Virus record (IMG/VR): IMGVR_UViG_3300030085_002431
Location: 62,001 to 126,000 of that record
DNA: 64,000 nt
Direction: 5' to 3' (one strand)
In this document: positions 34,417 through 63,381 of the stretch, piece after piece
Layout of the letters: every line of letters begins with the position of its first letter
How positions within the stretch are numbered: position 1 is the first letter of the stretch
The notes under the pieces: generated by a model
Seen by the model: only the letters and a program-made list of their open reading frames with translations
Databases searched by the model: none
What the model was told of the DNA's origin: nothing
Program-made: the position numbers and the translations under genes

Positions 34417-34803
34417 ATGGGAATTGAATTGAAGGACTGGTTGAATTCCATCAACCAGACTAAAAAGAATATTATTGATGAAGACCCTTCGACAGAGAAA
34501 CAATATCCTCCATACATTGTTAATAAATGCTTGAGTGGAAGCATTGATTGTCTCATGCTAGTTAATGAGATGAATATGCATCATCAATTAGAAAAGAGAC
34601 TCCAATACGATTTCCTTATAAATACTATACGATCCAAGAAAAGATTCAATCCTTGGATAAAGAAAGAGAAAATTAAAGACCTTGAATGTGTAAAATCTTA
34701 CTATGGGTATAGTAACGAAAAAGCAGAGCAAGCTCTGAGAATTTTGTCTGATGAGCAACTTAAATTTATTAAATCTAAACTTGATATTGGAGGAACAAGA
34801 TGA
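34417..34803 (+). CDS. gp62: Clamp loader small subunit gp62
   Basis: DWLNSIN, YPPYIVNKCLS, YYGYSNEKA. Confidence 0.93.
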   Translation: MGIELKDWLNSINQTKKNIIDEDPSTEKQYPPYIVNKCLSGSIDCLMLVNEMNMHHQLEKRLQYDFLINTIRSKKRFNPWIKKEKIKDLECVKSYYGYSNEKAEQALRILSDEQLKFIKSKLDIGGTR

Positions 34804-35240
34804 GCGTCGTTCAGGAACCTGAGGTAAGATGGTCACCAGACAAAATGGTGGAAGTTATTCTCAACGAACCTGATGACTTTTTGAAAGTGAGAGAAACACT
34901 AACTAGAATTGGTGTAGCATCCCGCAAAGAAAAAAAGATTTATCAGTCATGCCATATCCTGCATAAGCAGGGTAAATATTATCTAGTACACTTCAAGGAA
35001 CTGTTTGCTCTTGATGGCAAACCAGCAAACTTAACTGTCAATGATGTTCAACGTCGTAATAGAATTACCCAACTCTTAGCAGATTGGGGTTTGATTAACG
35101 TTGTTGATGCAGAAAAAATTCAAGATATTGCACCATTGAATCAAATTAAGGTTCTCCCTTATAGGGATAAGCAAGATTGGATTCTAGAAACCAAGTATAA
35201 TATTGGCACAAAGAAAAAGAAGGTTGAGGAAACCGAATGA
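34800..35240 (+). CDS. regA: Translational repressor RegA
   Basis: DDFLKVRETLTRIG, QSCHILHKQG.YY.VHFKELF. Confidence 0.97.
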   Translation: MSVVQEPEVRWSPDKMVEVILNEPDDFLKVRETLTRIGVASRKEKKIYQSCHILHKQGKYYLVHFKELFALDGKPANLTVNDVQRRNRITQLLADWGLINVVDAEKIQDIAPLNQIKVLPYRDKQDWILETKYNIGTKKKKVEETE

Positions 35241-35246
35241 TAAGGT

Positions 35247-35270
35247 AGGGGGTTCCGAACCCCCTTTTTT
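35247..35270 (+). terminator. Intrinsic terminator after regA
   Basis: AGGGGGTT-CCG-AACCCCCT followed by a T run. Confidence 0.85.
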
Positions 35271-35280
35271 AATGTCACCA

Positions 35281-35348
35281 TATAAATAGACATGGATGCC
35301 TTCGGGGTCCACACAAAAACAAACTCGCTTAATAAAGGAGCTAGAATA
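35281..35348 (+). promoter_or_regulatory. Late promoter TATAAATA plus a structured 5' leader of hsp20
   Basis: TATAAATA at 35281, then a GGATGCC-TTCG-GGGTCC hairpin, an A/C-rich spacer and an AAGGAG RBS. Confidence 0.6.
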
Positions 35349-35783
35349 ATGGGTAACCTCCAACGATGGAGTGCAGCAGACCTGCCTGCGCTCATGGAAA
35401 GAATCAACCGAAATAGTATCGGGATGGATGAGTACTTTGACCGTCTTTTTCACCTACATGAAAGTACCTCAAACTATCCGCCATATAACCTAGTGCAAGT
35501 TAATAATGTAGAGTCTAGACTTGAATTAGCACTAGCTGGATTCAAAAAAGAAGAAGTCAATGTCTACACGGAATACGGTAAACTCTTTATTGAAGGCAAG
35601 AAAGAGGATAAAGAAACACAGTCTTCATACGTCCACAAAGGTTTGGCTCAACGGTCGTTTACACGAACCTGGACTCTCAGTGACGACACGGAAATTGGAT
35701 CAGTTAATTTTGAAAATGGGCTTTTAGAGATTGTCCTTAAAAAAGTAGTACCAGATCATCATGCTCGTAAAGATTGGTTTTGA
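35349..35783 (+). CDS. hsp20: Small heat shock protein Hsp20 (IbpA-like)
   Basis: YPPYNL, ELALAGF, HKGLAQRSFTR, NGLLEI; ATG at 35349 follows AAGGAG. Confidence 0.95.
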   Translation: MGNLQRWSAADLPALMERINRNSIGMDEYFDRLFHLHESTSNYPPYNLVQVNNVESRLELALAGFKKEEVNVYTEYGKLFIEGKKEDKETQSSYVHKGLAQRSFTRTWTLSDDTEIGSVNFENGLLEIVLKKVVPDHHARKDWF

Positions 35784-38934: not shown

Positions 38935-41435
38935 GATTCTATACCAACGTCTACGAAAAGTTCAATAAGATTCTAGTTCGTGGTTATGACAACGGTAGAT
39001 ACTTTCAGACAGAGGAGGATTTTAATCCTACATTCTTCGTCACTTCAAAGAAAAAGACACAGTATAAAACTTTAGATGGAACTGTGGTTGAACCGATTCA
39101 ACCTGGTTCCATTTCTGATTGTAGGGAATTTATCAAGAAGTATTCAGAGGTTGAGGGATTTGCTGTATTTGGCAATGATAACTTCAAGGCACAGTATATC
39201 TCTGAGAAATATCCAGAGGACGAAATTAAGTTTGATATTAACAAAATCAGACTGTTTACGATTGACATTGAGGTCTCTGCAGAAAACGGATTCCCTAATG
39301 TATTTGAATGTGCAGAAGAACTTCTGACTATCACACTTCAAAACTATGCTACTAAGCAGATTATCTGTTTTGCAAATAACCGTGACTACGAGAATACTCG
39401 TAAGGATGTCATGTATGTGAAATGTGATAGTGAACAGGACATGGCACTGAAGTTCTTGGCATTCTGGGAGCAGAATACTCCTGATGCAATCACTGGATGG
39501 AACTGTGAACTGTATGATATTCCATACATTGCTGGAAGGTTTGAACGTATTCTTGGAACAAAAGACACCCGTCGTCTTTCTCCATGGAAGAATGTTCGAC
39601 GTAAAGAATTTGTGATTCAGGGACGTGAACAAATCTCTTATGAGATTGCTGGTGTTTCTGTTATTGATTATCTTGACCTCTATAAGAAGTTTACTTACAA
39701 GGCACAAGAATCATATCGATTGGACCACATCGCATTTGTGGAACTTGGACAGAAGAAGTTGGACCACTCTGAGTTTGATACCTTTAAGGACTTCTATACA
39801 AAGGACTGGCAGAAGTTTGTTGACTACAACATCAAAGACGTTGAACTTGTTGACCGTCTGGAAGACAAGATGAAACTCATTGAACTCTGTATGACTATGG
39901 CATACGATGCGAAGATTAACTATAATGATGTTTTCTTCCAGGTACGTACATGGGATGCAATTATCTACAATTATCTGAAGAAAAGGAATATCGTAATTCC
40001 TCCAAAAGATAGGAGTGAGAAGAATGAGAAGTATGCAGGTGCGTATGTTAAGGAACCGATTCCTGGGGTATATGATTGGGTTGTCAGTTTTGACCTCAAT
40101 AGCCTGTACCCTCACCTTATTATGCAGTACAATATCTCACCAGAGACACTCCAGGATTCGAGGCATCCCTCAGCAACAGTTGATAAGATACTTAATCAAC
40201 AGGTGACATTTGAGATGTATAAGGACAGTGCGGTTTGTGCTAATGGAGCAATGTATCGCAAGGATGTCCGTGGATTCCTACCTGAACTGATGGAGAAGAT
40301 GTATGGGGACAGAGTTGTATTCAAGAAACGAATGCTTGAAGCAAAGCAGCAGTACGAGAAGACTCCTACTAAAGCACTTGAGAAAGAAATCGCACGTTGT
40401 AACAACATTCAAATGGCGAAGAAGATTTCTCTTAACTCTGCTTATGGNNNNNNNNNNATTGGTAATCAATACTTCAGGTATTACAAACTAGCAAACGCAG
40501 AAGCAATTACTTATTCTGGTCAGGTATCAATCCGTTGGATTGAAAATAAAATGAATAAGTATCTAAATAGATTGTTGAAAACAAGTGATGTCGATTATGT
40601 TATTGCTTCTGATACTGATAGTATCTACCTTAACATGGGTCCTTTGGTCGAAATTGTATACAAGGGAAGAGAAAAAACTAATGAAAAGGTTGTCAATTTC
40701 CTTGACAAGATCTGTAAAATGGAACTTGAGCCTTATATTGAAAGTTCTTACCAAGAACTGGCGGACTATGTGAACGCATACGACCAAAAGATGCAGATGA
40801 AACGGGAAAACATTGCCAACCGTGGAATTTGGACAGCAAAGAAACGATACATCCTTAATGTATGGGATAGTGAAGGTGTTCGATACGAAGAACCTAAACT
40901 AAAAATCATGGGCATTGAAGCAGTAAAGTCTTCAACTCCTGCTCCATGCCGTAAGATGATTAAGGATGGACTCAAAATTGCTATGACTAAGACAGAAGAT
41001 GAGTTGATTGATTTTATTGAAGAGTCGAGAAAGCAATTTAATCAATATGGACCTGAGGAAATTTCTTTTCCTAGGACAGCATCTGATGTCATGAAGCATA
41101 AAGCACATGCAACAATCTACGGAAAGGGAACACCAATCCATGTAAGAGGTGCATTGCTTTATAATCACATGATTAAAGAAAGGGGATTGGATAAGAAGTA
41201 TGCTTCTATTCAGAATGGTGAGAAAATTAAGTTCTGCTATTTGAAACTTCCAAATCCTATTCGTGAGAATGTTATATCTTTCATCTCTGATTTCCCTGTG
41301 GAACTCGGACTAGACAAATATATCGACTATGACCTACAATTCTCAAAGGCATTCCTTGATCCCATGAAGGTCGTTTTGGATGCAATTGGTTGGAAAGTCG
41401 AACGAACCGTTACCCTAGAATCATTTTTTTCCTAA
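38931..41435 (+). CDS. gp43: Family B DNA polymerase gp43 (spans an assembly gap)
   Basis: DIE exonuclease motif, SFDLNSLYP, KKISLNSAYG, SDTDS, KKRY; Ns at 40448-40457. Confidence 0.97.
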   Translation: MRFYTNVYEKFNKILVRGYDNGRYFQTEEDFNPTFFVTSKKKTQYKTLDGTVVEPIQPGSISDCREFIKKYSEVEGFAVFGNDNFKAQYISEKYPEDEIKFDINKIRLFTIDIEVSAENGFPNVFECAEELLTITLQNYATKQIICFANNRDYENTRKDVMYVKCDSEQDMALKFLAFWEQNTPDAITGWNCELYDIPYIAGRFERILGTKDTRRLSPWKNVRRKEFVIQGREQISYEIAGVSVIDYLDLYKKFTYKAQESYRLDHIAFVELGQKKLDHSEFDTFKDFYTKDWQKFVDYNIKDVELVDRLEDKMKLIELCMTMAYDAKINYNDVFFQVRTWDAIIYNYLKKRNIVIPPKDRSEKNEKYAGAYVKEPIPGVYDWVVSFDLNSLYPHLIMQYNISPETLQDSRHPSATVDKILNQQVTFEMYKDSAVCANGAMYRKDVRGFLPELMEKMYGDRVVFKKRMLEAKQQYEKTPTKALEKEIARCNNIQMAKKISLNSAYXXXXIGNQYFRYYKLANAEAITYSGQVSIRWIENKMNKYLNRLLKTSDVDYVIASDTDSIYLNMGPLVEIVYKGREKTNEKVVNFLDKICKMELEPYIESSYQELADYVNAYDQKMQMKRENIANRGIWTAKKRYILNVWDSEGVRYEEPKLKIMGIEAVKSSTPAPCRKMIKDGLKIAMTKTEDELIDFIEESRKQFNQYGPEEISFPRTASDVMKHKAHATIYGKGTPIHVRGALLYNHMIKERGLDKKYASIQNGEKIKFCYLKLPNPIRENVISFISDFPVELGLDKYIDYDLQFSKAFLDPMKVVLDAIGWKVERTVTLESFFS
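40448..40457. other. Scaffold gap (10 N)
   Basis: Run of N inside polymerase motif B. Confidence 0.95.
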
Positions 41436-52773: not shown

Positions 52774-55031
52774 GTAACGGTACAAAAGTAATTAAACGGA
52801 ATGGTCGTGTTGAGTCCCTTGACCTGAATAAGATTCATCTCATGGTTGATGAAGCATGTAAGGACCTCGCAGGGGTCTCTGCTTCTCAGGTTGAAATGCA
52901 ATCTGGTATTCAATTTTATGATGGCATCACAACTGCTGAGATTCAAGAAATCTTGATTAAGAGTGCATCTGACTTGATTGATTTGGAAAATCCAAACTAT
53001 CAGTTTGTTGCTGCAAGGCTTTTGCTTTTTGCAGTTAGAAAATCCCTAAATGGTAAGGTACAGGATCATCCTGGTTTCGTTGACCATATTACTAAGTGTG
53101 TAGAACTTGGAGTCTATGATGCTTCAATCTTTACTAACTATACTGAAGAGGAACTTACCAAATGTGGTAATTACCTTAATCATCACCGTGACTATCTGTT
53201 CACTTATGCAGGTCTACGTCAAGTCGTTGACAAGTACCTGGTGCAAGATAGAAGCACGGGGAAGGTTTACGAGACTCCCCAGTTTATGTACATGATGATT
53301 GCTCTGACTATTTTTGCAGAGTATCCAAAAGAAACGAGAATCTCTTACGTCAAAAAGTATTATGACGCAATCTCCAAACACAAAATCAACATTCCCACAC
53401 CTATCATGGCAGGAGTGCGAACTCCACTTCGACAATTTNNNNNNNNNNCTGATATGGCTATCGGCAGATATGTTGCACAAAGGGCGGGAATCGGTATCAA
53501 CGCAGGCAGAATCCGTGGCATCAACGCTAAAATCAGAGGCGGAGAGGTACAACACACAGGTGTGGTCCCCTTCCTTAAAAAGTTTGAATCAACTGTGCGA
53601 TGCTGCACACAAAACGGCATCAGAGGTGGTTCAGCTACAGTCCACTTTCCTATCTGGCATCAGGAAATCGAAGACATCATCGTCCTGAAGAACAACAAAG
53701 GAACTGAAGACAATCGTGTTCGTAAACTCGATTACTCAATCCAAATCTCTAAACTCTTCTATGAACGATTCATCACCGATGGAGAAATCTCACTTTTCTC
53801 TCCGCACGACGTTCCTGGTCTGTATGATGCTTTTGGTACTCCTGGATTTGACGACTTGTATGTGGGTTATGAACGAGATCAGTCTATTCCAAGAAAGACT
53901 ATCGGAGCTCAAGAACTCATTCTGGACCTTCTGAAAGAACGTGCAGAGACTGGTCGTTTGTATCTTATGAACATTGACCACTGCAACTCCCACTCTTCCT
54001 TCAAGGATAAAGTGGAGATGAGTAACCTGTGTCAGGAAATTACACTCCCCACCAAACCACTCCAACATATCGATGACCCAGAGGGTGAAATTGCTCTTTG
54101 TATTCTTTCTGCAGTCAATGTTGGTAAGGTGAAAGATAATGATGAGTTTGAAGAACTCTGCAGTCTTGCTGTACGTGGTCTTGAAGAACTTATTGACTAC
54201 CAAGATTATCCTGTAGTTGCCGCAGAGAAGTCCACAAAGGCACGTCGTTCCCTTGGAGTAGGATTTATTGGTCTGGCACATTATCTTGCCAAACTAGGTT
54301 TCTCCTACGACTCTCAAGAAGCATGGGATGCCGTTCATGGTCTTTCAGAATCTTTCCAGTATTACCTCCTTAAGGCATCAAATGAGGTAGCAAAAGAAAA
54401 AGGTGCTTGTGAATACTTTAATCGGACCAAGTACTCAGATGGACTTCTTCCGATTGATACATATAAGCAGGATGTCGATGAAGTTTCATCTATAGAATAT
54501 CAACATGATTGGGAGTCTCTTAGAGTATCTATCTCCAAATACGGACTGCGACACAGCACGTTGTCCGCACAGATGCCATCGGAGAGCAGTTCCGTTGTGT
54601 CAAATGCAACAAATGGAATCGAACCACCTAGAGGATACTTGTCCGTTAAAAAGAGCAAAAAAGGACCCCTTAAGCAGATTGTTCCGCAGTATACCTCGTT
54701 AAAGAATAACTACACACTGTTGTGGGATATGACCTCTAATGAGGGTTATATCAATGTCGTTGCAGTGATGCAAAAATTCTTTGACCAGGCAATTTCTGGC
54801 AACTGGAGTTATAATCCAGAGAACTATCCAGACAATGAGGTTCCTGTTTCAGTAATGGCACAAGACTTCTTGACAACATACAAGTTGGGATGGAAAACTA
54901 GTTACTATCAGAATACATATGACAACAAAACTGATGAGGTAAAGGAGGCATCAGACAAAGCAGACGCAGACCTAATCGCAGAAATTTTAAGTTCAGAAGG
55001 AGAAGAAGATTGTGAATCCTGTAAAATTTAG
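52770..55031 (+). CDS. nrdA: Ribonucleotide reductase class Ia alpha subunit (spans an assembly gap)
   Basis: ATP cone VIKRNG, PTPIMAG, SNLCQEI, C-terminal CESC; Ns at 53439-53448. Confidence 0.97.
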   Translation: MSNGTKVIKRNGRVESLDLNKIHLMVDEACKDLAGVSASQVEMQSGIQFYDGITTAEIQEILIKSASDLIDLENPNYQFVAARLLLFAVRKSLNGKVQDHPGFVDHITKCVELGVYDASIFTNYTEEELTKCGNYLNHHRDYLFTYAGLRQVVDKYLVQDRSTGKVYETPQFMYMMIALTIFAEYPKETRISYVKKYYDAISKHKINIPTPIMAGVRTPLRQFXXXXDMAIGRYVAQRAGIGINAGRIRGINAKIRGGEVQHTGVVPFLKKFESTVRCCTQNGIRGGSATVHFPIWHQEIEDIIVLKNNKGTEDNRVRKLDYSIQISKLFYERFITDGEISLFSPHDVPGLYDAFGTPGFDDLYVGYERDQSIPRKTIGAQELILDLLKERAETGRLYLMNIDHCNSHSSFKDKVEMSNLCQEITLPTKPLQHIDDPEGEIALCILSAVNVGKVKDNDEFEELCSLAVRGLEELIDYQDYPVVAAEKSTKARRSLGVGFIGLAHYLAKLGFSYDSQEAWDAVHGLSESFQYYLLKASNEVAKEKGACEYFNRTKYSDGLLPIDTYKQDVDEVSSIEYQHDWESLRVSISKYGLRHSTLSAQMPSESSSVVSNATNGIEPPRGYLSVKKSKKGPLKQIVPQYTSLKNNYTLLWDMTSNEGYINVVAVMQKFFDQAISGNWSYNPENYPDNEVPVSVMAQDFLTTYKLGWKTSYYQNTYDNKTDEVKEASDKADADLIAEILSSEGEEDCESCKI
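53439..53448. other. Scaffold gap (10 N)
   Basis: Run of N after RQF; the expected SC-containing segment is not visible. Confidence 0.95.
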
Positions 55032-56211
55032 AGTCAGTTCGGACGATGAGTTTAATAAAAAGATGACTAGCGTTAAAGGCATGACTGTCTTTAACACAGA
55101 TAAGACAGAACTTAAAAAACAACCTATGTTCTTTGGTGCTCCTCTTGGAGTTCAAAGATATGATTCCTACAAGTATCCTATCTTTGATAAACTAACCACT
55201 CAGCAACTAGGTTATTTTTGGAGACCAGAAGAAGTCTCCCTTCAAAAAGACAGGTCAGATTACAAGACCCTTCGTCCTGAACAAAAGCATATCTTTACTT
55301 CTAATCTGAAGTATCAGATTCTGCTTGACTCTGTTCAGGGTCGTGGTCCTGGTATGGCATTCATTCCTTATTGCTCTCTTCCTGAACTGGAAGCATGTAT
55401 GGAAGTCTGGGGATTCATGGAAATGATTCATTCCCGTTCCTATACTTACATCATTAAGAATGTCTACCCTGATGCTGCAGAGGTATTTGATACTATTCTT
55501 GATGATGAAAGAATCATTGATCGTGCTAAGAGTGTTACTCAGGCATATGATGATTTCATTCAAGCAGCACAACAGTATGGTAATACTAGTGAGTGGGAGA
55601 TGGCACAAGAGGGTGCTGGATATTTCCGTGAAAACCGTAAAGAACTAAAGAGAAAACTATATAGAGCAGTTGCCAACGTCAATATCCTAGAGGGGATTAG
55701 ATTCTATGTTTCGTTTGCTTGCTCGTTTGCGTTTGGTGAACTCAAACTTATGGAAGGATCCGCTAAAATCATCTCTCTCATCGCAAGAGACGAAAATCAG
55801 CATCTTGCAATTACTCAAAACATCCTCAACAAGTGGAGTTCAGGGGATGACCCAGAGATGGCAGAAATTGCTAAAGAGGAAGAAGAGTGGGTGATTGGTG
55901 CTTTCCGCAACTGTGTTAATGAAGAGAAGGAATGGGCAAACTATCTGTTCAAAGATGGTTCCATGATTGGTCTTAATGACAAACTTCTCCATAATTATGT
56001 TGAGTGGGTTGCTAATCGTCGTATGAAGTCGATTGGTCTCAAACCAGTGTTTGATATTCCTGCTAAGAACAATCCTCTTCCTTGGACAGAGCATTGGATT
56101 TCTTCAAAAGGTCTTCAAGTTGCTCCTCAAGAAACAGAAGTTGAGTCTTATGTTGTTGGTGGAATCAAGCAAGATGTCAAGAAAGACACATTTAGTGGAT
56201 TCAAACTCTGA
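55012..56211 (+). CDS. nrdB: Ribonucleotide reductase class Ia beta subunit
   Basis: FWRPEEV, EMIHSRSY, LEGIRFYVSF, RDENQH, VAPQETE. Confidence 0.97.
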   Translation: MNPVKFRVSSDDEFNKKMTSVKGMTVFNTDKTELKKQPMFFGAPLGVQRYDSYKYPIFDKLTTQQLGYFWRPEEVSLQKDRSDYKTLRPEQKHIFTSNLKYQILLDSVQGRGPGMAFIPYCSLPELEACMEVWGFMEMIHSRSYTYIIKNVYPDAAEVFDTILDDERIIDRAKSVTQAYDDFIQAAQQYGNTSEWEMAQEGAGYFRENRKELKRKLYRAVANVNILEGIRFYVSFACSFAFGELKLMEGSAKIISLIARDENQHLAITQNILNKWSSGDDPEMAEIAKEEEEWVIGAFRNCVNEEKEWANYLFKDGSMIGLNDKLLHNYVEWVANRRMKSIGLKPVFDIPAKNNPLPWTEHWISSKGLQVAPQETEVESYVVGGIKQDVKKDTFSGFKL

Positions 56212-56231
56212 CAAATTGAATATTTTGTGGT

Positions 56232-56261
56232 TAAATAGGGGTAGTTAATACCCCTATTTTT
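56232..56261 (+). promoter_or_regulatory. Hairpin/terminator with a late-promoter core in its 5' arm, abutting the glgP start
   Basis: TAAATA at 56232; AAATAGGGGTA-GTTAA-TACCCCTATTT; ATG at 56262. Confidence 0.6.
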
Positions 56262-58652
56262 ATGCCAACTACTGATATACGCAGTGGAATCAATGAACGT
56301 CTCCTTTATACATTAGGAAAAAGACCAGAGGATGCCACTGTAAATGATGTATATAAAGCATTATGCTATGCCGTAAGGGATAGAATGGTTTCCGATTATC
56401 TTGAAGAGAAACCAGCACAGAAAGAAGTTGCATATCTCTCTGCTGAGTTCTTGATTGGACCTCAGTTAGGAAATAATCTTTTCAATCTAGATATACAGAA
56501 AGAAGCAGAGACTGCGGTAAAAGAATACGGATATACCCTTGATGATGTCTTAGAGGAGGCATGTGAACCTGGACTAGGAAATGGTGGTCTGGGTCGTCTT
56601 GCTGCTTGCTACATTGAGTCCTTGTCAACTCTCAAGGTTCCTGCAGTTGGATATGGAATCCGATATAAGTATGGTATTTTTAAACAGAGTATCAAAGATA
56701 ACAAGCAGGTAGAAGTAACGGATAACTGGTTACATGGTGATTGGCCATGGGAACTTTGCTATCCTGACCAGTCGGTTACAGTCTCATTTGGTGGGAAGGT
56801 AGAGCACTACACTTCAGATAAGAATAACTACAGAACTCGTTGGGTTCCTGAAGAGCAAGTAGTTGCTGTCCCTTATGATGTTTTGCAGGCAGGATATAAG
56901 GTCAATAAGTGCAATAAACTTAGACTATGGAGAGCAGATGCTATTGATGTATTTGATTATTCTGCTTTCAATAGTGGGGATTACTTTGGTTCAGTTGAAA
57001 ATAGAGTAGCATCAGAAACTATCTCTAAGGTTCTTTATCCAAATGATGAAACTACACAGGGAAAAGAACTGAGACTCAAGCAACAGTTCTTCTTTGTTAG
57101 TGCTTCTATCCAAGATATGGTAAGAAGTCTCAAGGAAAGAAATCTACCACTGGAAGATTTCCATGAGCATTATCAAGTTCAATTAAATGATACCCACCCA
57201 TCAGTTGCAGTTGCTGAACTGATGAGAATTCTCACTGATGAGAATCATATGGATTGGGATTTGGCATGGGATATCACAAACAAGTCTATTGCATATACAA
57301 ACCATACACTACTTCCAGAGGCACTGGAGAAGTGGGACCTAACCTTGTTTGGTAACTTACTCCCAAGGCACCTAGAAATAATCTATGAAATCAATCATAG
57401 GTTCTTGCAGATTGTTCGACTGAGATATCCTGGTGATGATGATATGCTTAGAAAGTTGTCCATCATTGACGAGTCTGGAAAACGTTCAGTTCGGATGGCA
57501 CACCTTGCAACAGTTGGGTCTCATCATGTGAATGGTGTTGCAGAAATCCATTCTGATTTGGTGAAGACAAAACTAATGCCAGAGTTCTATGCTCTTTGGC
57601 CTCACAAGTTTACTAATGTTACTAATGGTGTGACACCACGTCGATGGTTGGCATGTTCAAATCCAGACCTAGCAAAAGTTCTTAATCACTATGTTGGACC
57701 TGAGTGGGTATCAGATACTAGTCTCTTAAGTCACTTGGAAAATCATGTTGATGATAGTGAACTTCTAGAGAAACTAAACTTAACAAAACTAGAGGGAAAA
57801 CGTAAACTGTCTCGATATATACAAAACACACTTGGTATATCGGTTGATCCGACAAGTATGTTTGACGTACAGGTAAAGAGGATTCATGAGTACAAACGAC
57901 AGCATCTCCTTGCTTTATGGATTGTTAGTAGGTATATGTACATTAAGAATCACAAAGACGATTATGTTGTTCCTCGTACAATAATCTTTGGTGGTAAGGC
58001 AGCACCTGGATATTGGATGGCAAAACTAATCATCCAATTTATTTGCAACCTTGCCGAGACAATCAATTCCGACCCAGACATGGATGGAAAGTTGCGTGTT
58101 GTATTCTTACCTAACTACAGTGTTAAGTTGGGTGAGAAGGTTTATCCTGCTGCAGATTTGTCGGAGCAAATTTCTACTGCTGGTAAGGAAGCATCTGGTA
58201 CTGGTAATATGAAGTTCCAAATGAACGGTGCTTTAACTATTGGAACACTTGATGGTGCAAACGTTGAGATTAGGGACCTTGTAGGTGAAGAAAACTTCTT
58301 CTTGTTTGGTAACACTGAACCAGAGATTGAAGAACTTTGGAAGAATGGATATAATCCTAAACTCTTTATGAGTGCTGGATTGTTTAATTCTCTTGAACTT
58401 ATTTCCTCAGGTCATTTCTCCAATGGTGATAAAGAAGTATTCAAACCTCTGGTCTTGGATATCATGAACAAAGACCCATTCTGTGTTGCTGCTGACTTTG
58501 ATGATTATTGTCGTGCTCAAAGTGTAGTAGATACATGTTGGGGTAATAGAGAAGAGTGGAATAAAAAAGCACTCATTAATATTGCACGTTCTGGTTTCTT
58601 TTCTTCTGATAGGTCTATTGAAGACTACTGTGATAATATCTGGAAGATGTAG
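56262..58652 (+). CDS. glgP: Glycogen/alpha-glucan phosphorylase (GT35, PLP-dependent)
   Basis: YLSAEFLIG, GLGNGGLGRLAAC, ELRLKQQFF, QLNDTHP, YTNHTLLPEALE, VKRIHEYKRQ, EASGTGNMK (PLP lysine), TLDGANVE, FSSDRSI. Confidence 0.97.
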   Translation: MPTTDIRSGINERLLYTLGKRPEDATVNDVYKALCYAVRDRMVSDYLEEKPAQKEVAYLSAEFLIGPQLGNNLFNLDIQKEAETAVKEYGYTLDDVLEEACEPGLGNGGLGRLAACYIESLSTLKVPAVGYGIRYKYGIFKQSIKDNKQVEVTDNWLHGDWPWELCYPDQSVTVSFGGKVEHYTSDKNNYRTRWVPEEQVVAVPYDVLQAGYKVNKCNKLRLWRADAIDVFDYSAFNSGDYFGSVENRVASETISKVLYPNDETTQGKELRLKQQFFFVSASIQDMVRSLKERNLPLEDFHEHYQVQLNDTHPSVAVAELMRILTDENHMDWDLAWDITNKSIAYTNHTLLPEALEKWDLTLFGNLLPRHLEIIYEINHRFLQIVRLRYPGDDDMLRKLSIIDESGKRSVRMAHLATVGSHHVNGVAEIHSDLVKTKLMPEFYALWPHKFTNVTNGVTPRRWLACSNPDLAKVLNHYVGPEWVSDTSLLSHLENHVDDSELLEKLNLTKLEGKRKLSRYIQNTLGISVDPTSMFDVQVKRIHEYKRQHLLALWIVSRYMYIKNHKDDYVVPRTIIFGGKAAPGYWMAKLIIQFICNLAETINSDPDMDGKLRVVFLPNYSVKLGEKVYPAADLSEQISTAGKEASGTGNMKFQMNGALTIGTLDGANVEIRDLVGEENFFLFGNTEPEIEELWKNGYNPKLFMSAGLFNSLELISSGHFSNGDKEVFKPLVLDIMNKDPFCVAADFDDYCRAQSVVDTCWGNREEWNKKALINIARSGFFSSDRSIEDYCDNIWKM

Positions 58653-58656
58653 TCAT

Positions 58657-58686
58657 AGGGGGCATTGCCCCCTTTTTTTATAAATA
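58657..58686 (+). terminator. Terminator after glgP, followed immediately by late promoter TATAAATA
   Basis: AGGGGGCA-T-TGCCCCCT plus a T run; TATAAATA at 58679-58686. Confidence 0.75.
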
Positions 58687-58706
58687 AAAGAAACTGTGTC
58701 CATAAG

Positions 58707-61388
58707 ATGTCAAATATAGATGACGTAAAAAATCTGTATGAGGGAATTGCGGCAGAAGCATATAAAATGCCTGATCGAGTTGACCCAGCAGATATTAGAA
58801 AAGCACAACGTGCAAAGAAAGTAAGAAACCTTGCAACCGATGGTGCTACTGAAGGTGAAAGGGCAGCAGCAGAAAGAAAGACTAAAGGTCCTAAGATGTT
58901 TGGTGAAGGTAAGTACTCCAACTCTGAGACTTATGTAAAGGGTACTGCACCAGTTAGAGCAACTTATGGTGGGAAAACTGAATCTTTTCCTAAAGAAACT
59001 TATAAGAAGAAATCAAAAAAGAACGTAACTGAAGATACTTGTCCAGTTTGTGGGTTTGATCCATGCCAGTGCCTAGAAGGTACTTTGGTTGAGAAGAAGA
59101 AAGATTGTGTCAAGGCAGACAAAAAGACCATGCACAATTGTGCTAAGAAAGTCTGCTCTGAGCAGTGGGGTGTTGGTGAGTGCATCTATGGACAACATGC
59201 TGTCCCTGATGCTGAAGGTAACGTCGCATGGTATGACGTATTGTTCGAGCATGGCATCGAGAAAGGTGTAGATATCTCGACACTGGAAGTCCTGGAAGAA
59301 GGTTCACATAATGAGCATGTTGAGCACAGTGCTGAACTCACTGAAAAGAAGAAAGATGAGGCAAATATTGGTGGTGGCAACCTAAAGAAACTTGCTAAGA
59401 AAGCAACTAAGAGAGTTGACTCCAATGTAGATGGCACTGTAAACAGCAGTGACATGAAGGATTCTGATGTCGGTGAGTTTGTACCTGGACCAACTGGTGG
59501 CAAGGTAAAGACTAAGGCAAGATTTGAGAACTGGAGAAGTGATATGCATCCTCTCGTTGAGAGGACTATGACTGCTAAAGATAAGAAGAAAGAAGACCGT
59601 CTCAAGGATAAGTATGATGATTCTGAGATGAAGCAGAATATGATTGATAAGTACGGAAAGGAAGAAGGTGAAAAGATTTATTATGCAACAATCCGTAAGC
59701 AGGCAATGAAGGAGGAGATTGATAAGAGAAGAGCACCAGCAGAGCTGGTTTCTAGACTGAGTGCGAAACGTGAAGGTCACATGGCACAGGATGGACCTAA
59801 CAAAGCAGCATATGATGCTAAGCAGAGACTCCTTGCTAAGTCAAAAGCAAAAAGAGTTGATGAAGCAAAGTTCTTCCCTAATGCAGAAGACCCATTTGGT
59901 GCAACTGATAGACTTAAGAAGGTAAAACGTCCTGGCACAATCAAAAACAAAGGTGCTGGATATAAGGAGGGACAATCACTCAAGCACACTATCTTGAAGA
60001 AAGAAGGTCGCAAGGGTAAGGAAGGTATTGAATCTGCTGTTACAAGTCAAAAAGATAAACTAAGACAAAGAGGAAGACTTGCTGTTCCAACTCCTAAAGC
60101 CGTTTCTGATATGAGAAAGGCAAGTCTTGAAAAGTCTATGAGTAAAAAATCAAAGACTCCAGACCATGAGACTACTAGAGCAAAACTTGATAAGTCTCTG
60201 AAGTCTAAGTTGGGTGGTGACAGCAAGATGCAAAAGGCAGCAGATGATATTCTGTCTAGGGCAGCAAAAGATTCGGCAGTTGGTCCAGAATCTAAAGCAG
60301 CAGCATCTAGAGTCTTTAGTGGAAATATCAGTGGTAAGGGTGAAGAGAAACTAGTTGGTGGTGGTAAGCAACCAACTAAGAGACAGAGAGCAAAACTCAA
60401 TATGAGCAGAGACCTTGCGAAAGCAGGTGTTTCAATGAAAAAGGAACCATCCAAGAAAGTTAGTAGAAAACTTGAAAATACAACAGCAGGTGGTCCAGTA
60501 AAAGTTGTTAAAGCAGCACAAGATAAAAACAATAGTCCAAAGAAAGACAAAAGGTCTGAACCAAAGAGAAAAATCAAAAAGTCTCTTGGTGAGGAATACC
60601 TTGCACTCTATGGAGATGTGATTGCAGCACTTCTCGATTCCGAGTATGCAATCAACGAAGAGTCTGCAAACAATCTATTTGATTGCATGACTGAGGATGC
60701 TCTTACTGTAATCACTGAGCAGTATCTAGAGGAAAAAGCAAGAGGCACTAGAAAGAAATCTACTGCACACATCTATGATATGGACGAGACTCTTTATGGT
60801 CATGACCACTCTAAGGTAAGAGTCCACGTCAATGATAAGTCTGGTAAGAGAATTCAGAGTCTGAGCAATCAGGAGTTCAATACTCACAAACTAGATAAAG
60901 CTAAGGGTCATAAGTATGACTTCTCCGAGTTCGGTAGTTCAAAGACTTTCCAAAAGTCTGCGAAACCACTCAAGAAGATGATTAAGCATATGAAGAGACA
61001 GAAGGCAAGAGGATATGATACCCATATCGTCACTGCACGTTCTGACTTTGATGATAAGAAGCATCTTGCAAAGCAGCTCAATAAGCATGGTGTTGACATC
61101 ACACCAAATAAGAAAGGGACACACACTCACCTACACCGTTCTGGTAATGAAGAGGGTGATGATGTAGGTAAGAAGAAGCAAAGAGTTCTTTCAAGACTTG
61201 CTAAGAGACATGGGTACAAAAAAATCCACATGTACGATGATGCCGAGAAAGTCCATAAGGCAACTCATGGAAAGACTCCTGGCACTAAAGTCAAAGGACA
61301 TATGGTAAAACCAAATAAAAAAGGTGAGGTTACTTCCCGTCCTTACAAACCTACCAAACCTGGAACTGGTAGAAATAACAACAAATGA
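58707..61388 (+). CDS. Large modular late protein with a C-terminal HAD-family phosphatase domain; putative internal head polyprotein
   Basis: ATG at 58707 follows the late promoter; basic modules are separated by hydrophobic-x-Glu sites; HAD motifs DMDET, IVTAR, K, YDD. Confidence 0.65.
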   Translation: MSNIDDVKNLYEGIAAEAYKMPDRVDPADIRKAQRAKKVRNLATDGATEGERAAAERKTKGPKMFGEGKYSNSETYVKGTAPVRATYGGKTESFPKETYKKKSKKNVTEDTCPVCGFDPCQCLEGTLVEKKKDCVKADKKTMHNCAKKVCSEQWGVGECIYGQHAVPDAEGNVAWYDVLFEHGIEKGVDISTLEVLEEGSHNEHVEHSAELTEKKKDEANIGGGNLKKLAKKATKRVDSNVDGTVNSSDMKDSDVGEFVPGPTGGKVKTKARFENWRSDMHPLVERTMTAKDKKKEDRLKDKYDDSEMKQNMIDKYGKEEGEKIYYATIRKQAMKEEIDKRRAPAELVSRLSAKREGHMAQDGPNKAAYDAKQRLLAKSKAKRVDEAKFFPNAEDPFGATDRLKKVKRPGTIKNKGAGYKEGQSLKHTILKKEGRKGKEGIESAVTSQKDKLRQRGRLAVPTPKAVSDMRKASLEKSMSKKSKTPDHETTRAKLDKSLKSKLGGDSKMQKAADDILSRAAKDSAVGPESKAAASRVFSGNISGKGEEKLVGGGKQPTKRQRAKLNMSRDLAKAGVSMKKEPSKKVSRKLENTTAGGPVKVVKAAQDKNNSPKKDKRSEPKRKIKKSLGEEYLALYGDVIAALLDSEYAINEESANNLFDCMTEDALTVITEQYLEEKARGTRKKSTAHIYDMDETLYGHDHSKVRVHVNDKSGKRIQSLSNQEFNTHKLDKAKGHKYDFSEFGSSKTFQKSAKPLKKMIKHMKRQKARGYDTHIVTARSDFDDKKHLAKQLNKHGVDITPNKKGTHTHLHRSGNEEGDDVGKKKQRVLSRLAKRHGYKKIHMYDDAEKVHKATHGKTPGTKVKGHMVKPNKKGEVTSRPYKPTKPGTGRNNNK

Positions 61389-61480
61389 CTTGTCCCAAGT
61401 GGCAGAACCCTCTCTGCCACTGAGAATAAATAAACGATAAATATAATTATAACGAAGGTAAAATCCACTACCCTAGAAAG

Positions 61481-62818
61481 ATGAATAGAGAAGACTTAGG
61501 TGCGCTGAAAAATTTGTATGAAGGATTGCAATCATCTCCTTCATCCGAGACAGATAAACCAACAGTAACCAAAACAATCACAACTGGGTTGGACATTTAC
61601 GAGTCCCAAATCCAAAATACAACTACTGAAGAAACTGCATCTAATGTGCTTTCTGAGGAAGTAGAAACTGTGACAAAAATTACAGCATCTACACCTTCAA
61701 CAACTCCTTTAAAGAATACTACAGGAACCTTCTCTGAGGCATCATGGGGAACCATGTCCACAGTTAAGGATATCGCAGATATCTATTCTAATCTATACGA
61801 GAAGAAAGATCAAGATAAAGATGGTGATAATGACTTTGATGATGTTCGCATTGCGAGAATGATTGCTTCTGGCATGTCCAGAGAAGAAGCAATGAAGAAA
61901 GTCAAGGAAGATCCTAAAGGTGATGAAGTAAAGGAAGAGACCGAGACTGTAGATGAAGTCTACAAGGGTAAGCACGGTCAATCTGATAAAGAGTATGCTG
62001 CTTCCCGTTCACAGGGTGGCAAGATGATTTCTGGTGATGACAAGATGAGTGGTGCTGAATACACTCACGGTCGTAGAGTCAAGGCAGCAAACCCTGGAAT
62101 GCAACCTGATGTAGGTGGCAAGACCAAGCCCAAGTCCCAGGGTAAAATGGACAGAGGTACAAAAGCAGACCTCATGTACCGCAAAGCAAATCTTAAGAAA
62201 GCAAACGAGGAAACTGAAATGGCAAATGAGTACGAAGTCTACAATGTAGTCTCCACTTATCTTCTGGAGAACAACTTTGCAGAATCACAAGAAGGTGCTG
62301 ATGCAATCATCGAGAACATGAGTTCTGAGTGGGTAGAGCAAGTTATCGAAGAGTACAACGAGTATGTAGATGAGTACAACCTCTTCCTTGAGGAACTCGA
62401 TGCAGTTGGTGTAGACCTCGATGAGTGGACCGATGAGGAACTAGAAGAAGCATACAAGAAGCTTCCATTCCGCAAGATGGTCAAGCAGGCAAAGAAGACT
62501 GGTAAGTCCCTCGACGACGTTATGAAGGTCTCCCAGAGCCACAACCCATCCAGAGTAAAGGGTCGTTCTGAAGCAAACAAGATGGCAGGTGCTATCACTG
62601 GAGGACGTGCAGCAGACCGTAACCCACCAAAGGCAGATAAGTCTAAGGACGAGCCAGGTGGATATGGTGATATGTCCAAGTACACTGGTGACATCTATGC
62701 TAAGAAGTTCAAGCCAGGTAAGACAGTTCCTAAGGTAATGAAGTTCGGCAGACCTTTCGGTAAGTACAAGCCAAGAAGCATCAAGTTCGATGACATCAAG
62801 AAGCAAGGTCTCGATTGA
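61481..62818 (+). CDS. Modular late protein, putative internal head protein
   Basis: TAAATA at 61427 and 61438; KNLYEG N-terminal motif shared with the upstream gene; alternating acidic and basic blocks. Confidence 0.6.
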   Translation: MNREDLGALKNLYEGLQSSPSSETDKPTVTKTITTGLDIYESQIQNTTTEETASNVLSEEVETVTKITASTPSTTPLKNTTGTFSEASWGTMSTVKDIADIYSNLYEKKDQDKDGDNDFDDVRIARMIASGMSREEAMKKVKEDPKGDEVKEETETVDEVYKGKHGQSDKEYAASRSQGGKMISGDDKMSGAEYTHGRRVKAANPGMQPDVGGKTKPKSQGKMDRGTKADLMYRKANLKKANEETEMANEYEVYNVVSTYLLENNFAESQEGADAIIENMSSEWVEQVIEEYNEYVDEYNLFLEELDAVGVDLDEWTDEELEEAYKKLPFRKMVKQAKKTGKSLDDVMKVSQSHNPSRVKGRSEANKMAGAITGGRAADRNPPKADKSKDEPGGYGDMSKYTGDIYAKKFKPGKTVPKVMKFGRPFGKYKPRSIKFDDIKKQGLD

Positions 62819-62940: not shown

Positions 62941-63381
62941 ATGAGTACTTATGAAAATCCTTGGGTGTTCTTGGAACGAGATTTTGATAGCTCTGATGTT
63001 GGGGACCACTTTGGGTTTGTGTACCTCATTACCAATCTCAAGAACCAACGACAGTACATTGGGAGAAAGTATTTTTGGTCGTTCCGAACCCCAAAAGGTA
63101 AGAAACGAAAAGTAAAGTCAGAGTCTGACTGGAAAAAATATTATGGTTCTTGTCCAGAACTAAAAGAGGATATAAAAAAGTTTGGTAAGGAAAATTTTCG
63201 TAGAGAAATTATATCTTTACATCAAACTAAAGGCAAAGTGAACTACGAAGAAACCAGACAACTCTTTGTGAACGGTGTGTTGACCGAATCTCTTGACGAT
63301 GGCACACCCAAATACTATAATAGTAATGTCCTAGGACGATATTATCGTAAAGATTACTTCAATGAACAGTCTGGAAACTGA
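62941..63381 (+). CDS. GIY-YIG family nuclease-like protein
   Basis: GFVYLITN....QYIGRK, YYGS, F.REI, E...Q, YYN.N. Confidence 0.8.
   Translation: MSTYENPWVFLERDFDSSDVGDHFGFVYLITNLKNQRQYIGRKYFWSFRTPKGKKRKVKSESDWKKYYGSCPELKEDIKKFGKENFRREIISLHQTKGKVNYEETRQLFVNGVLTESLDDGTPKYYNSNVLGRYYRKDYFNEQSGN

What the first reader, a model, noticed from the sequence alone, without database searches (positions are those of the whole stretch)
56262..58652. Intact glycogen phosphorylase in a cyanomyovirus
Seen: a 796-aa GT35 phosphorylase with all hallmark motifs including the PLP lysine (EASGTGNMK), AT-rich codon usage like its neighbours, placed directly after nrdAB with phage-type signals on both sides and no N-gap between it and nrdB. 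Known: GlgP releases glucose-1-phosphate from glycogen, the main cyanobacterial carbon store, feeding the oxidative pentose phosphate pathway (NADPH, ribose-5-P) that cyanophages boost with talC/zwf/gnd/cp12. It is not among the standard cyanophage auxiliary genes I know. Inference: the phage taps stored carbon directly to fuel dNTP synthesis.
Basis: partly seen in the sequence, partly recalled or inferred. Interest (0 to 1): 0.8.

Follow-up and report, generated by a model that had tools for sequence, protein, structure and literature searches.

The report
Cyanophage-encoded glycogen phosphorylase gene
A virus of marine cyanobacteria carries an intact, host-derived enzyme for breaking down the cell's glycogen store; the gene is widespread in uncultured relatives and, unlike the host copies, lacks two cysteine-bearing end pieces that may be regulatory.

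Summary
Window 56262-58652 (+) is an intact 796-aa GT35 alpha-glucan phosphorylase. It has every catalytic residue and sits between nrdB and a late-type gene in a T4-like cyanomyovirus (IMG/VR contig of 250.6 kb). Contigs from three independent metagenomes bridge both junctions without a mismatch.

It is not a one-off. At least 198 IMG/VR contigs encode relatives of 71% identity or more. All 80 contigs examined are T4-like cyanomyovirus backbones. Only one isolate in GenBank has the gene (S-SCSM2R, annotated but not discussed).

The phage proteins form one clade under strong purifying selection (dN/dS 0.03-0.12). Their nearest relatives are Prochlorococcus and marine Synechococcus GlgP (64-65%).

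- Every phage copy lacks the N-terminal (PTPGC) and C-terminal (ITCD) cysteine-bearing peptides found in all 27 host orthologues.
- In 20 of 80 loci, including the earliest branches, glgP overlaps a PMM-type phosphohexomutase gene.
- The gene occupies three insertion hot spots, often near gnd, talC or psbA.

Best reading: a phage metabolic gene that releases glucose-1-phosphate from glycogen to feed the oxidative pentose phosphate pathway. The identity is well supported. The pathway role and the loss of regulation are inferred. It is a new member of a known kind, of moderate to high interest.

The parts
56262..58652 (+). glgP: 796-aa GT35 alpha-glucan (glycogen) phosphorylase. The PLP lysine K651 is encoded at 58212-58214 and the EASGTGNMK motif at 58188-58214.
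   Evidence: The alignment to rabbit muscle GP maps K651 to K680, K539/R540/Y544/K545 to K568/R569/Y573/K574, H348 to H377, N455 to N484, E643/S645/G646/T647 to E672/S674/G675/T676, and G108/G109/L110 to G134/G135/L136. All are invariant in 11 phage homologues.
52758..55031 (+). nrdA, ribonucleotide reductase large subunit. It contains a 10-N run at 53439-53448.
   Evidence: Pfam PF02867, PF00317 and PF03477. N run.
55012..56211 (+). nrdB, ribonucleotide reductase small subunit. It is the conserved left border of the insertion hot spot.
   Evidence: Pfam PF00268. nrdB is followed by the SegE-like gene in 63 of 72 related contigs that lack glgP.
56233..56259 (+). Hairpin (11-bp stem, 5-nt loop) followed by a U-run, ending 5 nt before the glgP ATG. 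It is a terminator-like element between nrdB and glgP.
   Evidence: -15.4 kcal/mol, z -3.13. The consensus scan did not list it.
58657..58680 (+). Intrinsic-terminator-like hairpin (7-bp GC-rich stem) plus a U7 run, directly after the glgP stop codon.
58679..58686 (+). TATAAATA, the T4 late-promoter consensus, upstream of the next ORF.
   Evidence: 6 copies in the window, all on the + strand, several just upstream of ORFs. The count is not enriched over shuffles (15 of 100 shuffles reach it).
58665..61388 (+). 907-aa ORF of unknown function. The listed TTG start overlaps the terminator, so the true start is probably further downstream. It is lineage-specific cargo between glgP and the SegE-like gene.
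   Evidence: No Pfam hit and weak PHROG hits only. Present in L003 and L005, absent in L011 and L045.
61481..62818 (+). 445-aa ORF of unknown function, also cargo of the same island.
62941..63381 (+). SegE-like GIY-YIG homing endonuclease. It is the conserved right border of the nrdB hot spot.
   Evidence: PF19835, 4e-55. It lies directly after glgP in 13 loci and after nrdB in 63 of 72 contigs without glgP.
34800..35783 (+). regA (34800-35240) and hsp20 (35292-35783). In this genome this is the empty version of the site that holds glgP in 52 of 81 related loci.
   Evidence: PHROG 242 and 432. Site map.

Best explanation
The gene is a functional auxiliary metabolic gene of T4-like cyanomyoviruses, derived from the host. 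It encodes a PLP-dependent alpha-1,4-glucan phosphorylase that, during infection, splits glucose-1-phosphate off the host's glycogen.

A phosphohexomutase then converts glucose-1-phosphate to glucose-6-phosphate. In many relatives this would be the phage's own PMM-type enzyme. In this genome it would be the host's enzyme. Glucose-6-phosphate enters the oxidative pentose phosphate pathway, which these phages already reinforce with zwf, gnd, talC and cp12. That pathway yields NADPH and ribose-5-phosphate for the nucleotide synthesis carried out by the adjacent nrdAB.

The phage enzyme has lost both cyanobacteria-specific terminal peptides, each carrying a conserved cysteine. It is therefore probably blind to whatever control (possibly redox or thioredoxin) the host exerts through them.

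Shown here: gene identity, intactness, phage location, clade structure, selection, loss of the terminal peptides, and gene neighbourhoods. Inferred: substrate, metabolic fate of the product, and loss of regulation.
For: - Identity and catalytic residues.
- Genuine phage locus.
- Family size: 198 IMG/VR contigs and more than 120 protein clusters at 72-96% identity. All 81 copies examined are full length.
- Selection: dN/dS is 0.03-0.115 in 14 phage pairs.
- Phylogeny: a single phage clade with support 100/100. The nearest relatives are picocyanobacterial GlgP at 64-65%. The grouping with Prochlorococcus has support 97/97.
- Terminal peptides: 27 of 27 host orthologues have PTPGC in an N-terminal extension of about 30 aa, and a 12-16-aa C-terminal tail with a conserved Cys. 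All 81 phage copies lack both.
- Precedent for regulation: the C-terminal peptide is a cyanobacteria-specific regulatory element. In Synechocystis GlgP1 it is a thioredoxin-sensitive redox switch.
- PMM-type mutase: it has an intact DVDGT motif, overlaps glgP by 13 nt in 20 of 80 loci, and is present in the earliest phage branches.
- Pentose phosphate neighbours: gnd is on the same contig at L002:11975-13057. talC is near glgP in L035, L054, L056, L075 and L323. S-SCSM2R carries glgP together with talC, zwf, gnd and cp12.
- Host regulon: host glgP peaks at dusk with the pentose phosphate genes, in one RpaA regulon.
Against: - No enzyme assay or infection data exist.
- The only transcription hint is one 250-nt contig in a metatranscriptome, and that could be DNA carry-over.
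- Neither the NCBIfam GlgP nor the MalP equivalog cut-off is reached, so a preference for glycogen over maltodextrin is not established.
- In Synechocystis GlgP1, deleting the C-terminal peptide lowers activity. Loss of the peptides therefore need not mean a more active enzyme.
- No PMM, talC or zwf was found in the window or in the flank held.
- A terminator-like hairpin sits right before the ATG and no promoter was found, so how the gene is transcribed is unknown.
- In S-SCSM2R, L006 and L323 the gene borders glycosyltransferase and nucleotide-sugar islands, which fits a different fate for glucose-1-phosphate.
Confidence: 0.6

Rival explanations
1. The enzyme supplies glucose-1-phosphate for nucleotide-sugar synthesis (UDP-, dTDP- or ADP-glucose), not for the pentose phosphate pathway. 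The sugars would glycosylate the cell envelope, the virion or the DNA. On this reading the PMM-type enzyme does its canonical job of making mannose-1-phosphate for GDP-mannose.
For: In S-SCSM2R, glgP lies at the edge of a block of 10 or more glycosyltransferase, UDP-glucose dehydrogenase and Kds genes, and is followed by a weak GT8-like ORF. L323 shows the same kind of island upstream. The window and its contig encode a cytidylyltransferase, a nucleotide-sugar epimerase and a GDP-mannose-dehydratase-like ORF. The PMM family is named for mannose.
Against: The commonest, and apparently oldest, context is regA-glgP-PMM-hsp20 in the replication module, with no glycosyltransferases. Neighbours there are purS, purM, nrdAB, gnd and talC. 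No sugar-1-phosphate nucleotidylyltransferase is adjacent to glgP in any locus examined.
Confidence: 0.2
2. It has the same enzymatic role, but its purpose is to power infection in darkness or deep low light, when photosynthesis cannot supply ATP and NADPH. It boosts the dose of an otherwise normally regulated step rather than overriding control in the light.
For: Host glgP and the pentose phosphate genes are night-phase genes. Deleting the Synechocystis C-terminal peptide gives a low-activity rather than a hyperactive enzyme.
Against: The loss of both Cys-bearing peptides in all 81 phage copies is not explained by a simple dosage role. No depth or light data were analysed here.
Confidence: 0.15
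3. The gene is a passenger with no function for the phage, either host DNA picked up recently or an assembly chimera.
For: The window comes from a metagenome assembly and contains two N runs.
Against: Both junctions are bridged without mismatch in three independent runs. The same nrdB-glgP arrangement is found in 18 other contigs. The composition matches the phage rather than the host. There is a long-stemmed single phage clade with dN/dS below 0.12. A cultured isolate carries it.
Confidence: 0.02

Closest known systems
Picocyanobacterial GlgP (Prochlorococcus and marine Synechococcus glycogen phosphorylase, e.g. Prochlorococcus MIT 9322, locus L082)
   Same: 64-65% identity over the whole 796 aa, the same GT35 fold family and the same catalytic residues. 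The maximum-likelihood tree puts the phage clade with Prochlorococcus.
   Different: The host proteins are 840-854 aa. They carry an N-terminal extension of about 30 aa with PTPGC, and a 12-16-aa C-terminal tail with a conserved Cys (ITCD). Every phage copy lacks both. The phage stem branch is long, at 0.44 substitutions per site, and GC3 differs.
Synechococcus phage S-SCSM2R ORF260 'carbohydrate phosphorylase' (PQ898602; BMC Biol 2025, PMC12801897)
   Same: 77% amino-acid identity, the same phage clade, and a large (244 kb) T4-like cyanomyovirus. That genome also has talC, zwf, gnd and cp12.
   Different: A different genomic site (petF-peroxiredoxin-glgP-GT8-like, next to a glycosyltransferase island and psbA/psbD) rather than nrdB-glgP. 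The paper's main text does not discuss the gene.
Synechocystis GlgP1 and its C-terminal redox switch (bioRxiv 10.1101/2022.11.21.517384). The best PDB match, 9wvu (855 aa, about 1006 bits), has an unnamed source organism.
   Same: A cyanobacterial GT35 enzyme that aligns over residues 36-832 of the solved chain. It shows that the cyanobacteria-specific terminal peptide is regulatory.
   Different: The Synechocystis switch is a Cys837/Cys842 pair within the C-terminal tail. The picocyanobacterial orthologues have one Cys in each terminal peptide, and the phage enzyme has neither peptide. Whether the picocyanobacterial peptides act as a redox switch has not been tested.
Established cyanophage pentose-phosphate auxiliary genes (talC, zwf, gnd, cp12)
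   Same: They are host-derived, reside in cyanomyoviruses, and belong to the same host dusk regulon as glgP. They co-occur with glgP on the same genomes or contigs.
   Different: glgP acts one or two steps upstream, mobilising the polymer store. It is much rarer in isolates (1 genome) and has not been characterised.

Membership tests
GT35 glycogen/starch/alpha-glucan phosphorylase (PF00343 / TIGR02093) | Full-length match to the family profile above the curated cut-off | tested here: met
   PF00343 at 1033 bits, profile positions 2-713 of 713. TIGR02093 at 1124 bits against a cut-off of 553.
GT35 glycogen/starch/alpha-glucan phosphorylase (PF00343 / TIGR02093) | PLP-binding lysine in the EASGTGNMK motif | tested here: met
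   K651 aligns with rabbit K680. It is invariant in 11 phage homologues.
GT35 glycogen/starch/alpha-glucan phosphorylase (PF00343 / TIGR02093) | Phosphate- and glucosyl-binding residues (rabbit G134-L136, H377, N484, K568, R569, Y573, K574, E672, S674-T676) | tested here: met
   All are identical in the window protein by alignment to 3zcp_A, and invariant across phage copies.
GT35 glycogen/starch/alpha-glucan phosphorylase (PF00343 / TIGR02093) | Phosphorolytic activity on alpha-1,4-glucan, and a preference for glycogen over maltodextrin | not testable with these tools
   The NCBIfam equivalogs for GlgP (889 bits against 1546) and MalP (888 against 1273) are both below cut-off. An enzyme assay is needed.
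Cyanobacterial GlgP subgroup with terminal regulatory peptide | Cyanobacteria-specific C-terminal extension (PMC12892837). In picocyanobacteria there is also an N-terminal PTPGC extension. | tested here: not met
   The window protein ends 2 residues after the conserved IW motif, and an in-frame stop lies 9 codons upstream of its ATG. All 81 phage copies lack both peptides, while 27 of 27 host orthologues have them.
Phage auxiliary metabolic gene (host-derived metabolic gene kept by a phage) | Lies inside a phage genome, flanked by phage genes, and is not an assembly artefact | tested here: met
Phage auxiliary metabolic gene (host-derived metabolic gene kept by a phage) | Host homologue as nearest cellular relative, and a phage-specific clade under purifying selection | tested here: met
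   The exact donor within the picocyanobacteria is unsettled (AU p 0.084 and 0.42).
Phage auxiliary metabolic gene (host-derived metabolic gene kept by a phage) | Expressed during infection and changes host metabolism | tested here: inconclusive
   One metatranscriptome contig covers 57650-57899 with 1 difference. DNA carry-over is not excluded, and there are no infection data.

The most novel reading that the evidence does not exclude
The phage GlgP is a deregulated, redox-blind version of the host enzyme. By shedding the two Cys-bearing terminal peptides through which the cell keeps glycogen breakdown switched off in the light, it lets the phage mobilise glycogen at any time of day. Together with the overlapping PMM-type mutase it forms a two-gene module that turns glycogen into glucose-6-phosphate. 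That module would complete the phage-encoded copy of the host's night-time programme (cp12, zwf, gnd, talC). It would also identify glycogen as the carbon source for the phage-boosted pentose phosphate pathway.
Probability: 0.35. Interest if true: 0.75.

Novelty: new member of a known kind. Interest (0 to 1): 0.6.

Why it matters
Cyanophages are known to redirect host carbon into the pentose phosphate pathway, but how the substrate for that pathway is supplied has been assumed rather than shown. A phage-borne glycogen phosphorylase points directly at the cell's glycogen store. It is frequent in uncultured cyanomyoviruses, often coupled to a phosphohexomutase, and co-resident with gnd, talC and zwf.

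The question is now testable, because one cultured phage (S-SCSM2R) carries the gene. The consistent loss of the two host-specific cysteine-bearing termini also offers a natural experiment on how picocyanobacterial GlgP is regulated, which has not been studied. If glycogen is drained early in infection, that affects estimates of carbon released on lysis and of day-night infection dynamics in the ocean's most abundant phototrophs.

Tried and rejected
- Assembly chimera: rejected (and the recurrence of the arrangement).
- Other tblastn hits in the phage collection: these are Salmonella and E. coli cellular or fragment records and gut 'Bacteriophage sp.' contigs at 47% identity or less. They are not cyanophage relatives.
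- Prior description: full-text searches found no description of a phage-encoded GlgP. The exceptions are the S-SCSM2R annotation and a review sentence citing Waldbauer et al. 2019, which says GlgP homologues occur on putative viral fragments. That paper is not held, so I could not read what it shows.
- Promoter: the sigma-70 scan found nothing upstream of glgP.
- Other pathway genes: PMM, talC and zwf were not found in the window or in L002. Only gnd was found, just beyond the window end. The PHROG family lists were cut at 25 families, so small genes such as cp12 are not excluded.
- Frequency estimate: glgP was present in 5 of 73 regA-anchored loci and 0 of 72 nrdB-anchored loci.
- Donor within the picocyanobacteria: AU tests were inconclusive (p 0.084 and 0.42). 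The two constrained searches gave mutually inconsistent likelihoods, so I do not claim a Prochlorococcus donor.
- Glycine dehydrogenase next to psbA in L006: it looked new but is already known from P-HM1, P-HM2 and MED4-213.
- Structure prediction: not run. The fold is not in doubt given the very strong sequence match to a solved cyanobacterial structure (about 1006 bits), and the tool returns no coordinates from which to measure the Cys-Cys distance.
Full report

Yes. The ORF at 56262-58652 (+) starts with ATG and encodes 796 aa. Its translation carries EASGTGNMK at residues 643-651. Pfam PF00343 (carbohydrate phosphorylase) matches end to end at 1033 bits. NCBIfam TIGR02093 scores 1124 bits against a cut-off of 553.

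I aligned it to rabbit muscle phosphorylase (3zcp_A; chain index minus 1 gives the usual numbering). Every residue of the catalytic site is identical:

| Window residue(s) | Rabbit residue(s) |
|---|---|
| G108/G109/L110 | G134/G135/L136 |
| H348 | H377 |
| N455 | N484 |
| K539/R540/Y544/K545 | K568/R569/Y573/K574 |
| E643/S645/G646/T647 | E672/S674/G675/T676 |
| K651 | K680, the PLP lysine |

The mammalian gate residues N284 and F285 are not conserved, as in the cyanobacterial (9wvu) and 9ukq enzymes aligned here.

nrdA and nrdB lie directly upstream. The only N runs are at 40448-40457 and 53439-53448, so none separates nrdB from glgP. GC3 of glgP is 0.315, close to its neighbours (0.34-0.38). 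It is far from Prochlorococcus glgP (0.20) and Synechococcus glgP (0.74-0.80).

**2. Is it really in a phage?**

Window 40000-64000 matches 411 phage records, all of them cyanophages, at about 77% nucleotide identity. PHROG searches find the full T4-like set. This includes tail fibre, sheath, tube, portal, major head protein, terminase, gp45, gp44/62, regA, hsp20, gp43, UvsX, gp41, MazG and primase.

The window is part of IMGVR_UViG_3300030085_002431, a contig of 250,613 bp. At least 18 marine metagenome runs hold the 4-kb stretch around glgP. In three runs from three different studies, assembler contigs cross the nrdB-glgP junction without a single difference (for example 56106-56536 and 56106-56762). 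They also cross the junction between glgP and the downstream ORF without a difference (58190-58967, 58182-59400, 58190-59122).

**3. How common is it?**

In GenBank phage genomes, only Synechococcus phage S-SCSM2R (244 kb, host WH7803) has a close homologue. It is 77% identical and annotated 'carbohydrate phosphorylase'. The paper's main text does not mention it.

In uncultured data the gene is common. 198 IMG/VR contigs encode relatives of 71% identity or more. The protein database lists more than 120 clusters (at 90% identity) of 72-96% identity, all 791-813 aa long. Several sit on contigs of 228-251 kb.

In rough samples, 5 of 73 regA-anchored cyanomyovirus contigs carry glgP, and 0 of 72 nrdB-anchored contigs do. 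It is a minority gene, but widespread.

A review citing Waldbauer et al. 2019 notes that host GlgP keeps being made during infection and has homologues on putative viral fragments. I could not read the original paper.

**4. Genomic anatomy across relatives.**

In the 80 loci fetched, glgP always sits in a T4-like cyanomyovirus backbone. It occupies three kinds of site:

- **Site A:** between regA and hsp20, near gp43 (52 loci).
- **Site B:** between nrdB and a SegE-like GIY-YIG endonuclease gene (19 loci, including the window).
- **Site C:** an auxiliary-gene island with petF, psbA, psbD, petE and talC (S-SCSM2R, L006, L323).

Sites A and B are general hot spots. In contigs without glgP, regA is followed by hsp20 in 62 of 71, and nrdB by the SegE-like gene in 63 of 72. 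The gaps range from about 60 nt to 3 kb. In the window the regA-hsp20 site is empty (34800-35783).

On the glgP tree the site label changes at least 6 times, so the gene has moved repeatedly between hot spots.

In the window, glgP is bracketed by a hairpin plus U-run ending 5 nt before its ATG. After the stop there is a GC-rich terminator, followed by a TATAAATA late-promoter-like box for the next ORF. No promoter for glgP itself was found.

**5. Origin and selection.**

The closest cellular proteins are:

- Prochlorococcus and marine Synechococcus GlgP, at 64-65%.
- Cyanobium, at 58-62%.
- All others, at 55-57% or less.

All phage copies form one clade. It has SH-aLRT 100 with 94 rows. It has 100/100 under LG+C20 PMSF with 45 rows. 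The clade sits on a long stem (0.41-0.44) and groups with Prochlorococcus at 97/97.

AU tests do not reject placing the phage clade outside Prochlorococcus plus Synechococcus (p 0.084), or outside all sampled picocyanobacteria (p 0.42). The constrained searches were heuristic. Both the phages and Prochlorococcus are AT-rich. I therefore claim a picocyanobacterial origin, but not a specific donor.

Pairwise dN/dS within the phage clade is 0.03-0.115, and all 81 copies are full length. This is a long-resident gene under selection, not a passenger.

**6. What differs from the host enzyme.**

Host orthologues are 840-854 aa long. All 27 sequences of the clade nearest the phages carry two extra pieces:

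- An N-terminal extension of about 30 aa containing PTPGC.
- A 12-16-aa C-terminal tail with a conserved cysteine (consensus P-V-E-I-T-C-D).

A neighbouring cyanobacterial clade lacks both cysteines together.

Every one of the 81 phage proteins lacks both peptides. They end 2-4 residues after the conserved IW motif (one has 11 residues), with no cysteine in the tail. An in-frame stop 12-35 codons upstream of the LxYTLG motif rules out a host-length extension. In the window the stop is 9 codons before the ATG.

The literature calls the C-terminal peptide a regulatory feature unique to cyanobacterial GlgPs (PMC12892837). In Synechocystis GlgP1 a Cys837/Cys842 pair in that peptide is a redox switch. 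Reduced thioredoxin inhibits the enzyme and oxidation activates it. Deleting the peptide gives the low-activity state (bioRxiv 10.1101/2022.11.21.517384).

By inference, the phage enzyme cannot respond to whatever acts through these peptides. Whether that makes it more or less active is unknown.

One lead is recalled from memory only. In mammalian phosphorylase the N-terminal tail and the last five residues compete for the same surface at the subunit interface. That would make a disulfide between the two host termini geometrically plausible. It is untested.

**7. Companions.**

In 20 of 80 loci, at both site A and site B, glgP is followed by a 238-245-aa ORF that overlaps its end by 13 nt. The ORF matches:

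- PF03332, eukaryotic-type phosphomannomutase (1e-21).
- Solved PMM structures from fungi, Leishmania and human, over its full length (3e-22).

The HAD nucleophile motif DVDGT is intact.

Rooted with host sequences, the earliest phage branches all have the arrangement regA-glgP-PMM-hsp20. The pair is therefore probably ancestral, and PMM was later lost several times, including in the window's lineage (tblastn finds none in the window). From established knowledge, enzymes of this family also interconvert glucose-1-phosphate and glucose-6-phosphate. The pair would then make glucose-6-phosphate from glycogen.

Other neighbours and co-residents:

- purS, purM, 2OG-Fe(II) oxygenases and psbA.
- gnd on the window's own contig, at L002:11975-13057, about 6.8 kb downstream of glgP and just past the window end.
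- talC within a few kb of glgP in L035, L054, L056, L075 and L323.
- talC, zwf, gnd and cp12 together with glgP in S-SCSM2R.

In the host, glgP peaks at dusk with zwf, gnd and tal (PMC2663038). It belongs with them and cp12 to one RpaA-controlled module.

**8. Mechanism and rivals.**

The best-supported reading is that the phage enzyme phosphorolyses host glycogen. A mutase, either the phage PMM where present or the host PGM here, makes glucose-6-phosphate. The oxidative pentose phosphate pathway then yields NADPH and ribose-5-phosphate for nucleotide synthesis next to nrdAB. I give this a confidence of 0.6.

| Rival | Confidence | Main point |
|---|---|---|
| Glucose-1-phosphate feeds nucleotide-sugar and glycan synthesis | 0.2 | Suggested by the glycosyltransferase islands beside site C |
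| Dosage role for dark or low-light infection, without deregulation | 0.15 | Host glgP is a night-phase gene |
| Passenger or assembly artefact | 0.02 | Contradicted |

Substrate preference (glycogen against maltodextrin) is not settled by sequence.

**9. Novelty and verdict.**

The enzyme family and the concept of cyanophage carbon-metabolism genes are both well known. The gene is already in public databases and is annotated in one isolate.

The following were found in none of the literature I could search:

- Recognition of a coherent, selected phage GlgP family.
- Its ancestral coupling to a PMM-type mutase.
- Its mobility among hot spots.
- The uniform loss of both host terminal peptides.

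I file it as a new member of a known kind, with interest 0.6. The claim of rarity holds for isolates but not for nature. The metabolic inference is plausible and strengthened by context, but unproven.

Noticed in passing
L078:12364-13095; also L033, L034, L048, L054, L056, L067-L081 and others; isolates P-TIM68 gp126 (L324:3965-4711) and S-SSM7_237 (L325:4001-4693): There is a family of PMM-type (PF03332, HAD) phosphohexomutase genes of about 240 aa in cyanomyoviruses. It overlaps glgP in 20 of 80 loci. It also occurs without glgP in isolates, where it is annotated only as 'hypothetical protein'. It looks like an undescribed auxiliary metabolic gene.
   Followed up: partly
window 62941-63381 (+): The ORF that PHROGs label 'NAD synthetase' is a SegE-like GIY-YIG homing endonuclease (PF19835, 4e-55). 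It follows nrdB in 63 of 72 related contigs and marks the right border of the variable island that holds glgP. Endonuclease-driven recombination may explain why cargo collects there.
   Followed up: partly
L002:11975-13057 (about 1.4 kb beyond the window's end, same contig): A 6-phosphogluconate dehydrogenase gene (gnd; PF03446 and PF00393) lies about 6.8 kb downstream of glgP. It is followed by a 2OG-Fe(II) oxygenase ORF and a GDP-mannose-dehydratase/epimerase-like ORF.
   Followed up: partly
window 40448-40457 and 53439-53448: Two runs of exactly 10 N lie inside gp43 (DNA polymerase) and nrdA. Both ORFs read through them in frame, so they look like masked bases rather than scaffold gaps of unknown length.
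   Followed up: no
window 58665-62818 (+): Two large ORFs (907 and 445 aa) have no Pfam match. They sit between glgP and the SegE-like gene only in the window's close relatives (L003, L005). L011, L045 and others go straight from glgP to the endonuclease gene. Their function is unknown. The 907-aa ORF has a weak C-terminal hit to a polynucleotide-kinase PHROG.
   Followed up: no
window 23001-24000: There is a local GC peak (0.506, against about 0.38 elsewhere) inside the 465-aa ORF at 22935-24332, whose function was not assigned individually here. The reason for the peak is unknown.
   Followed up: no
L006:13680-16217: A glycine dehydrogenase (GcvP, 846 aa) gene lies next to psbA and glgP on a phage contig. 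It looked unusual, but homologues of 68-69% identity are annotated in Prochlorococcus phages P-HM1, P-HM2 and MED4-213, so it is ordinary.
   Followed up: yes
L108-L116 (Cyanobium/Synechococcus genome loci): Freshwater and brackish picocyanobacteria carry a second GlgP clade that lacks both the PTPGC and the C-tail cysteine. Cyanobium sp. ATX 6A2 has one gene of each type (L105 and L112). The two cysteines are present together or absent together, which hints that they work as a pair.
   Followed up: partly
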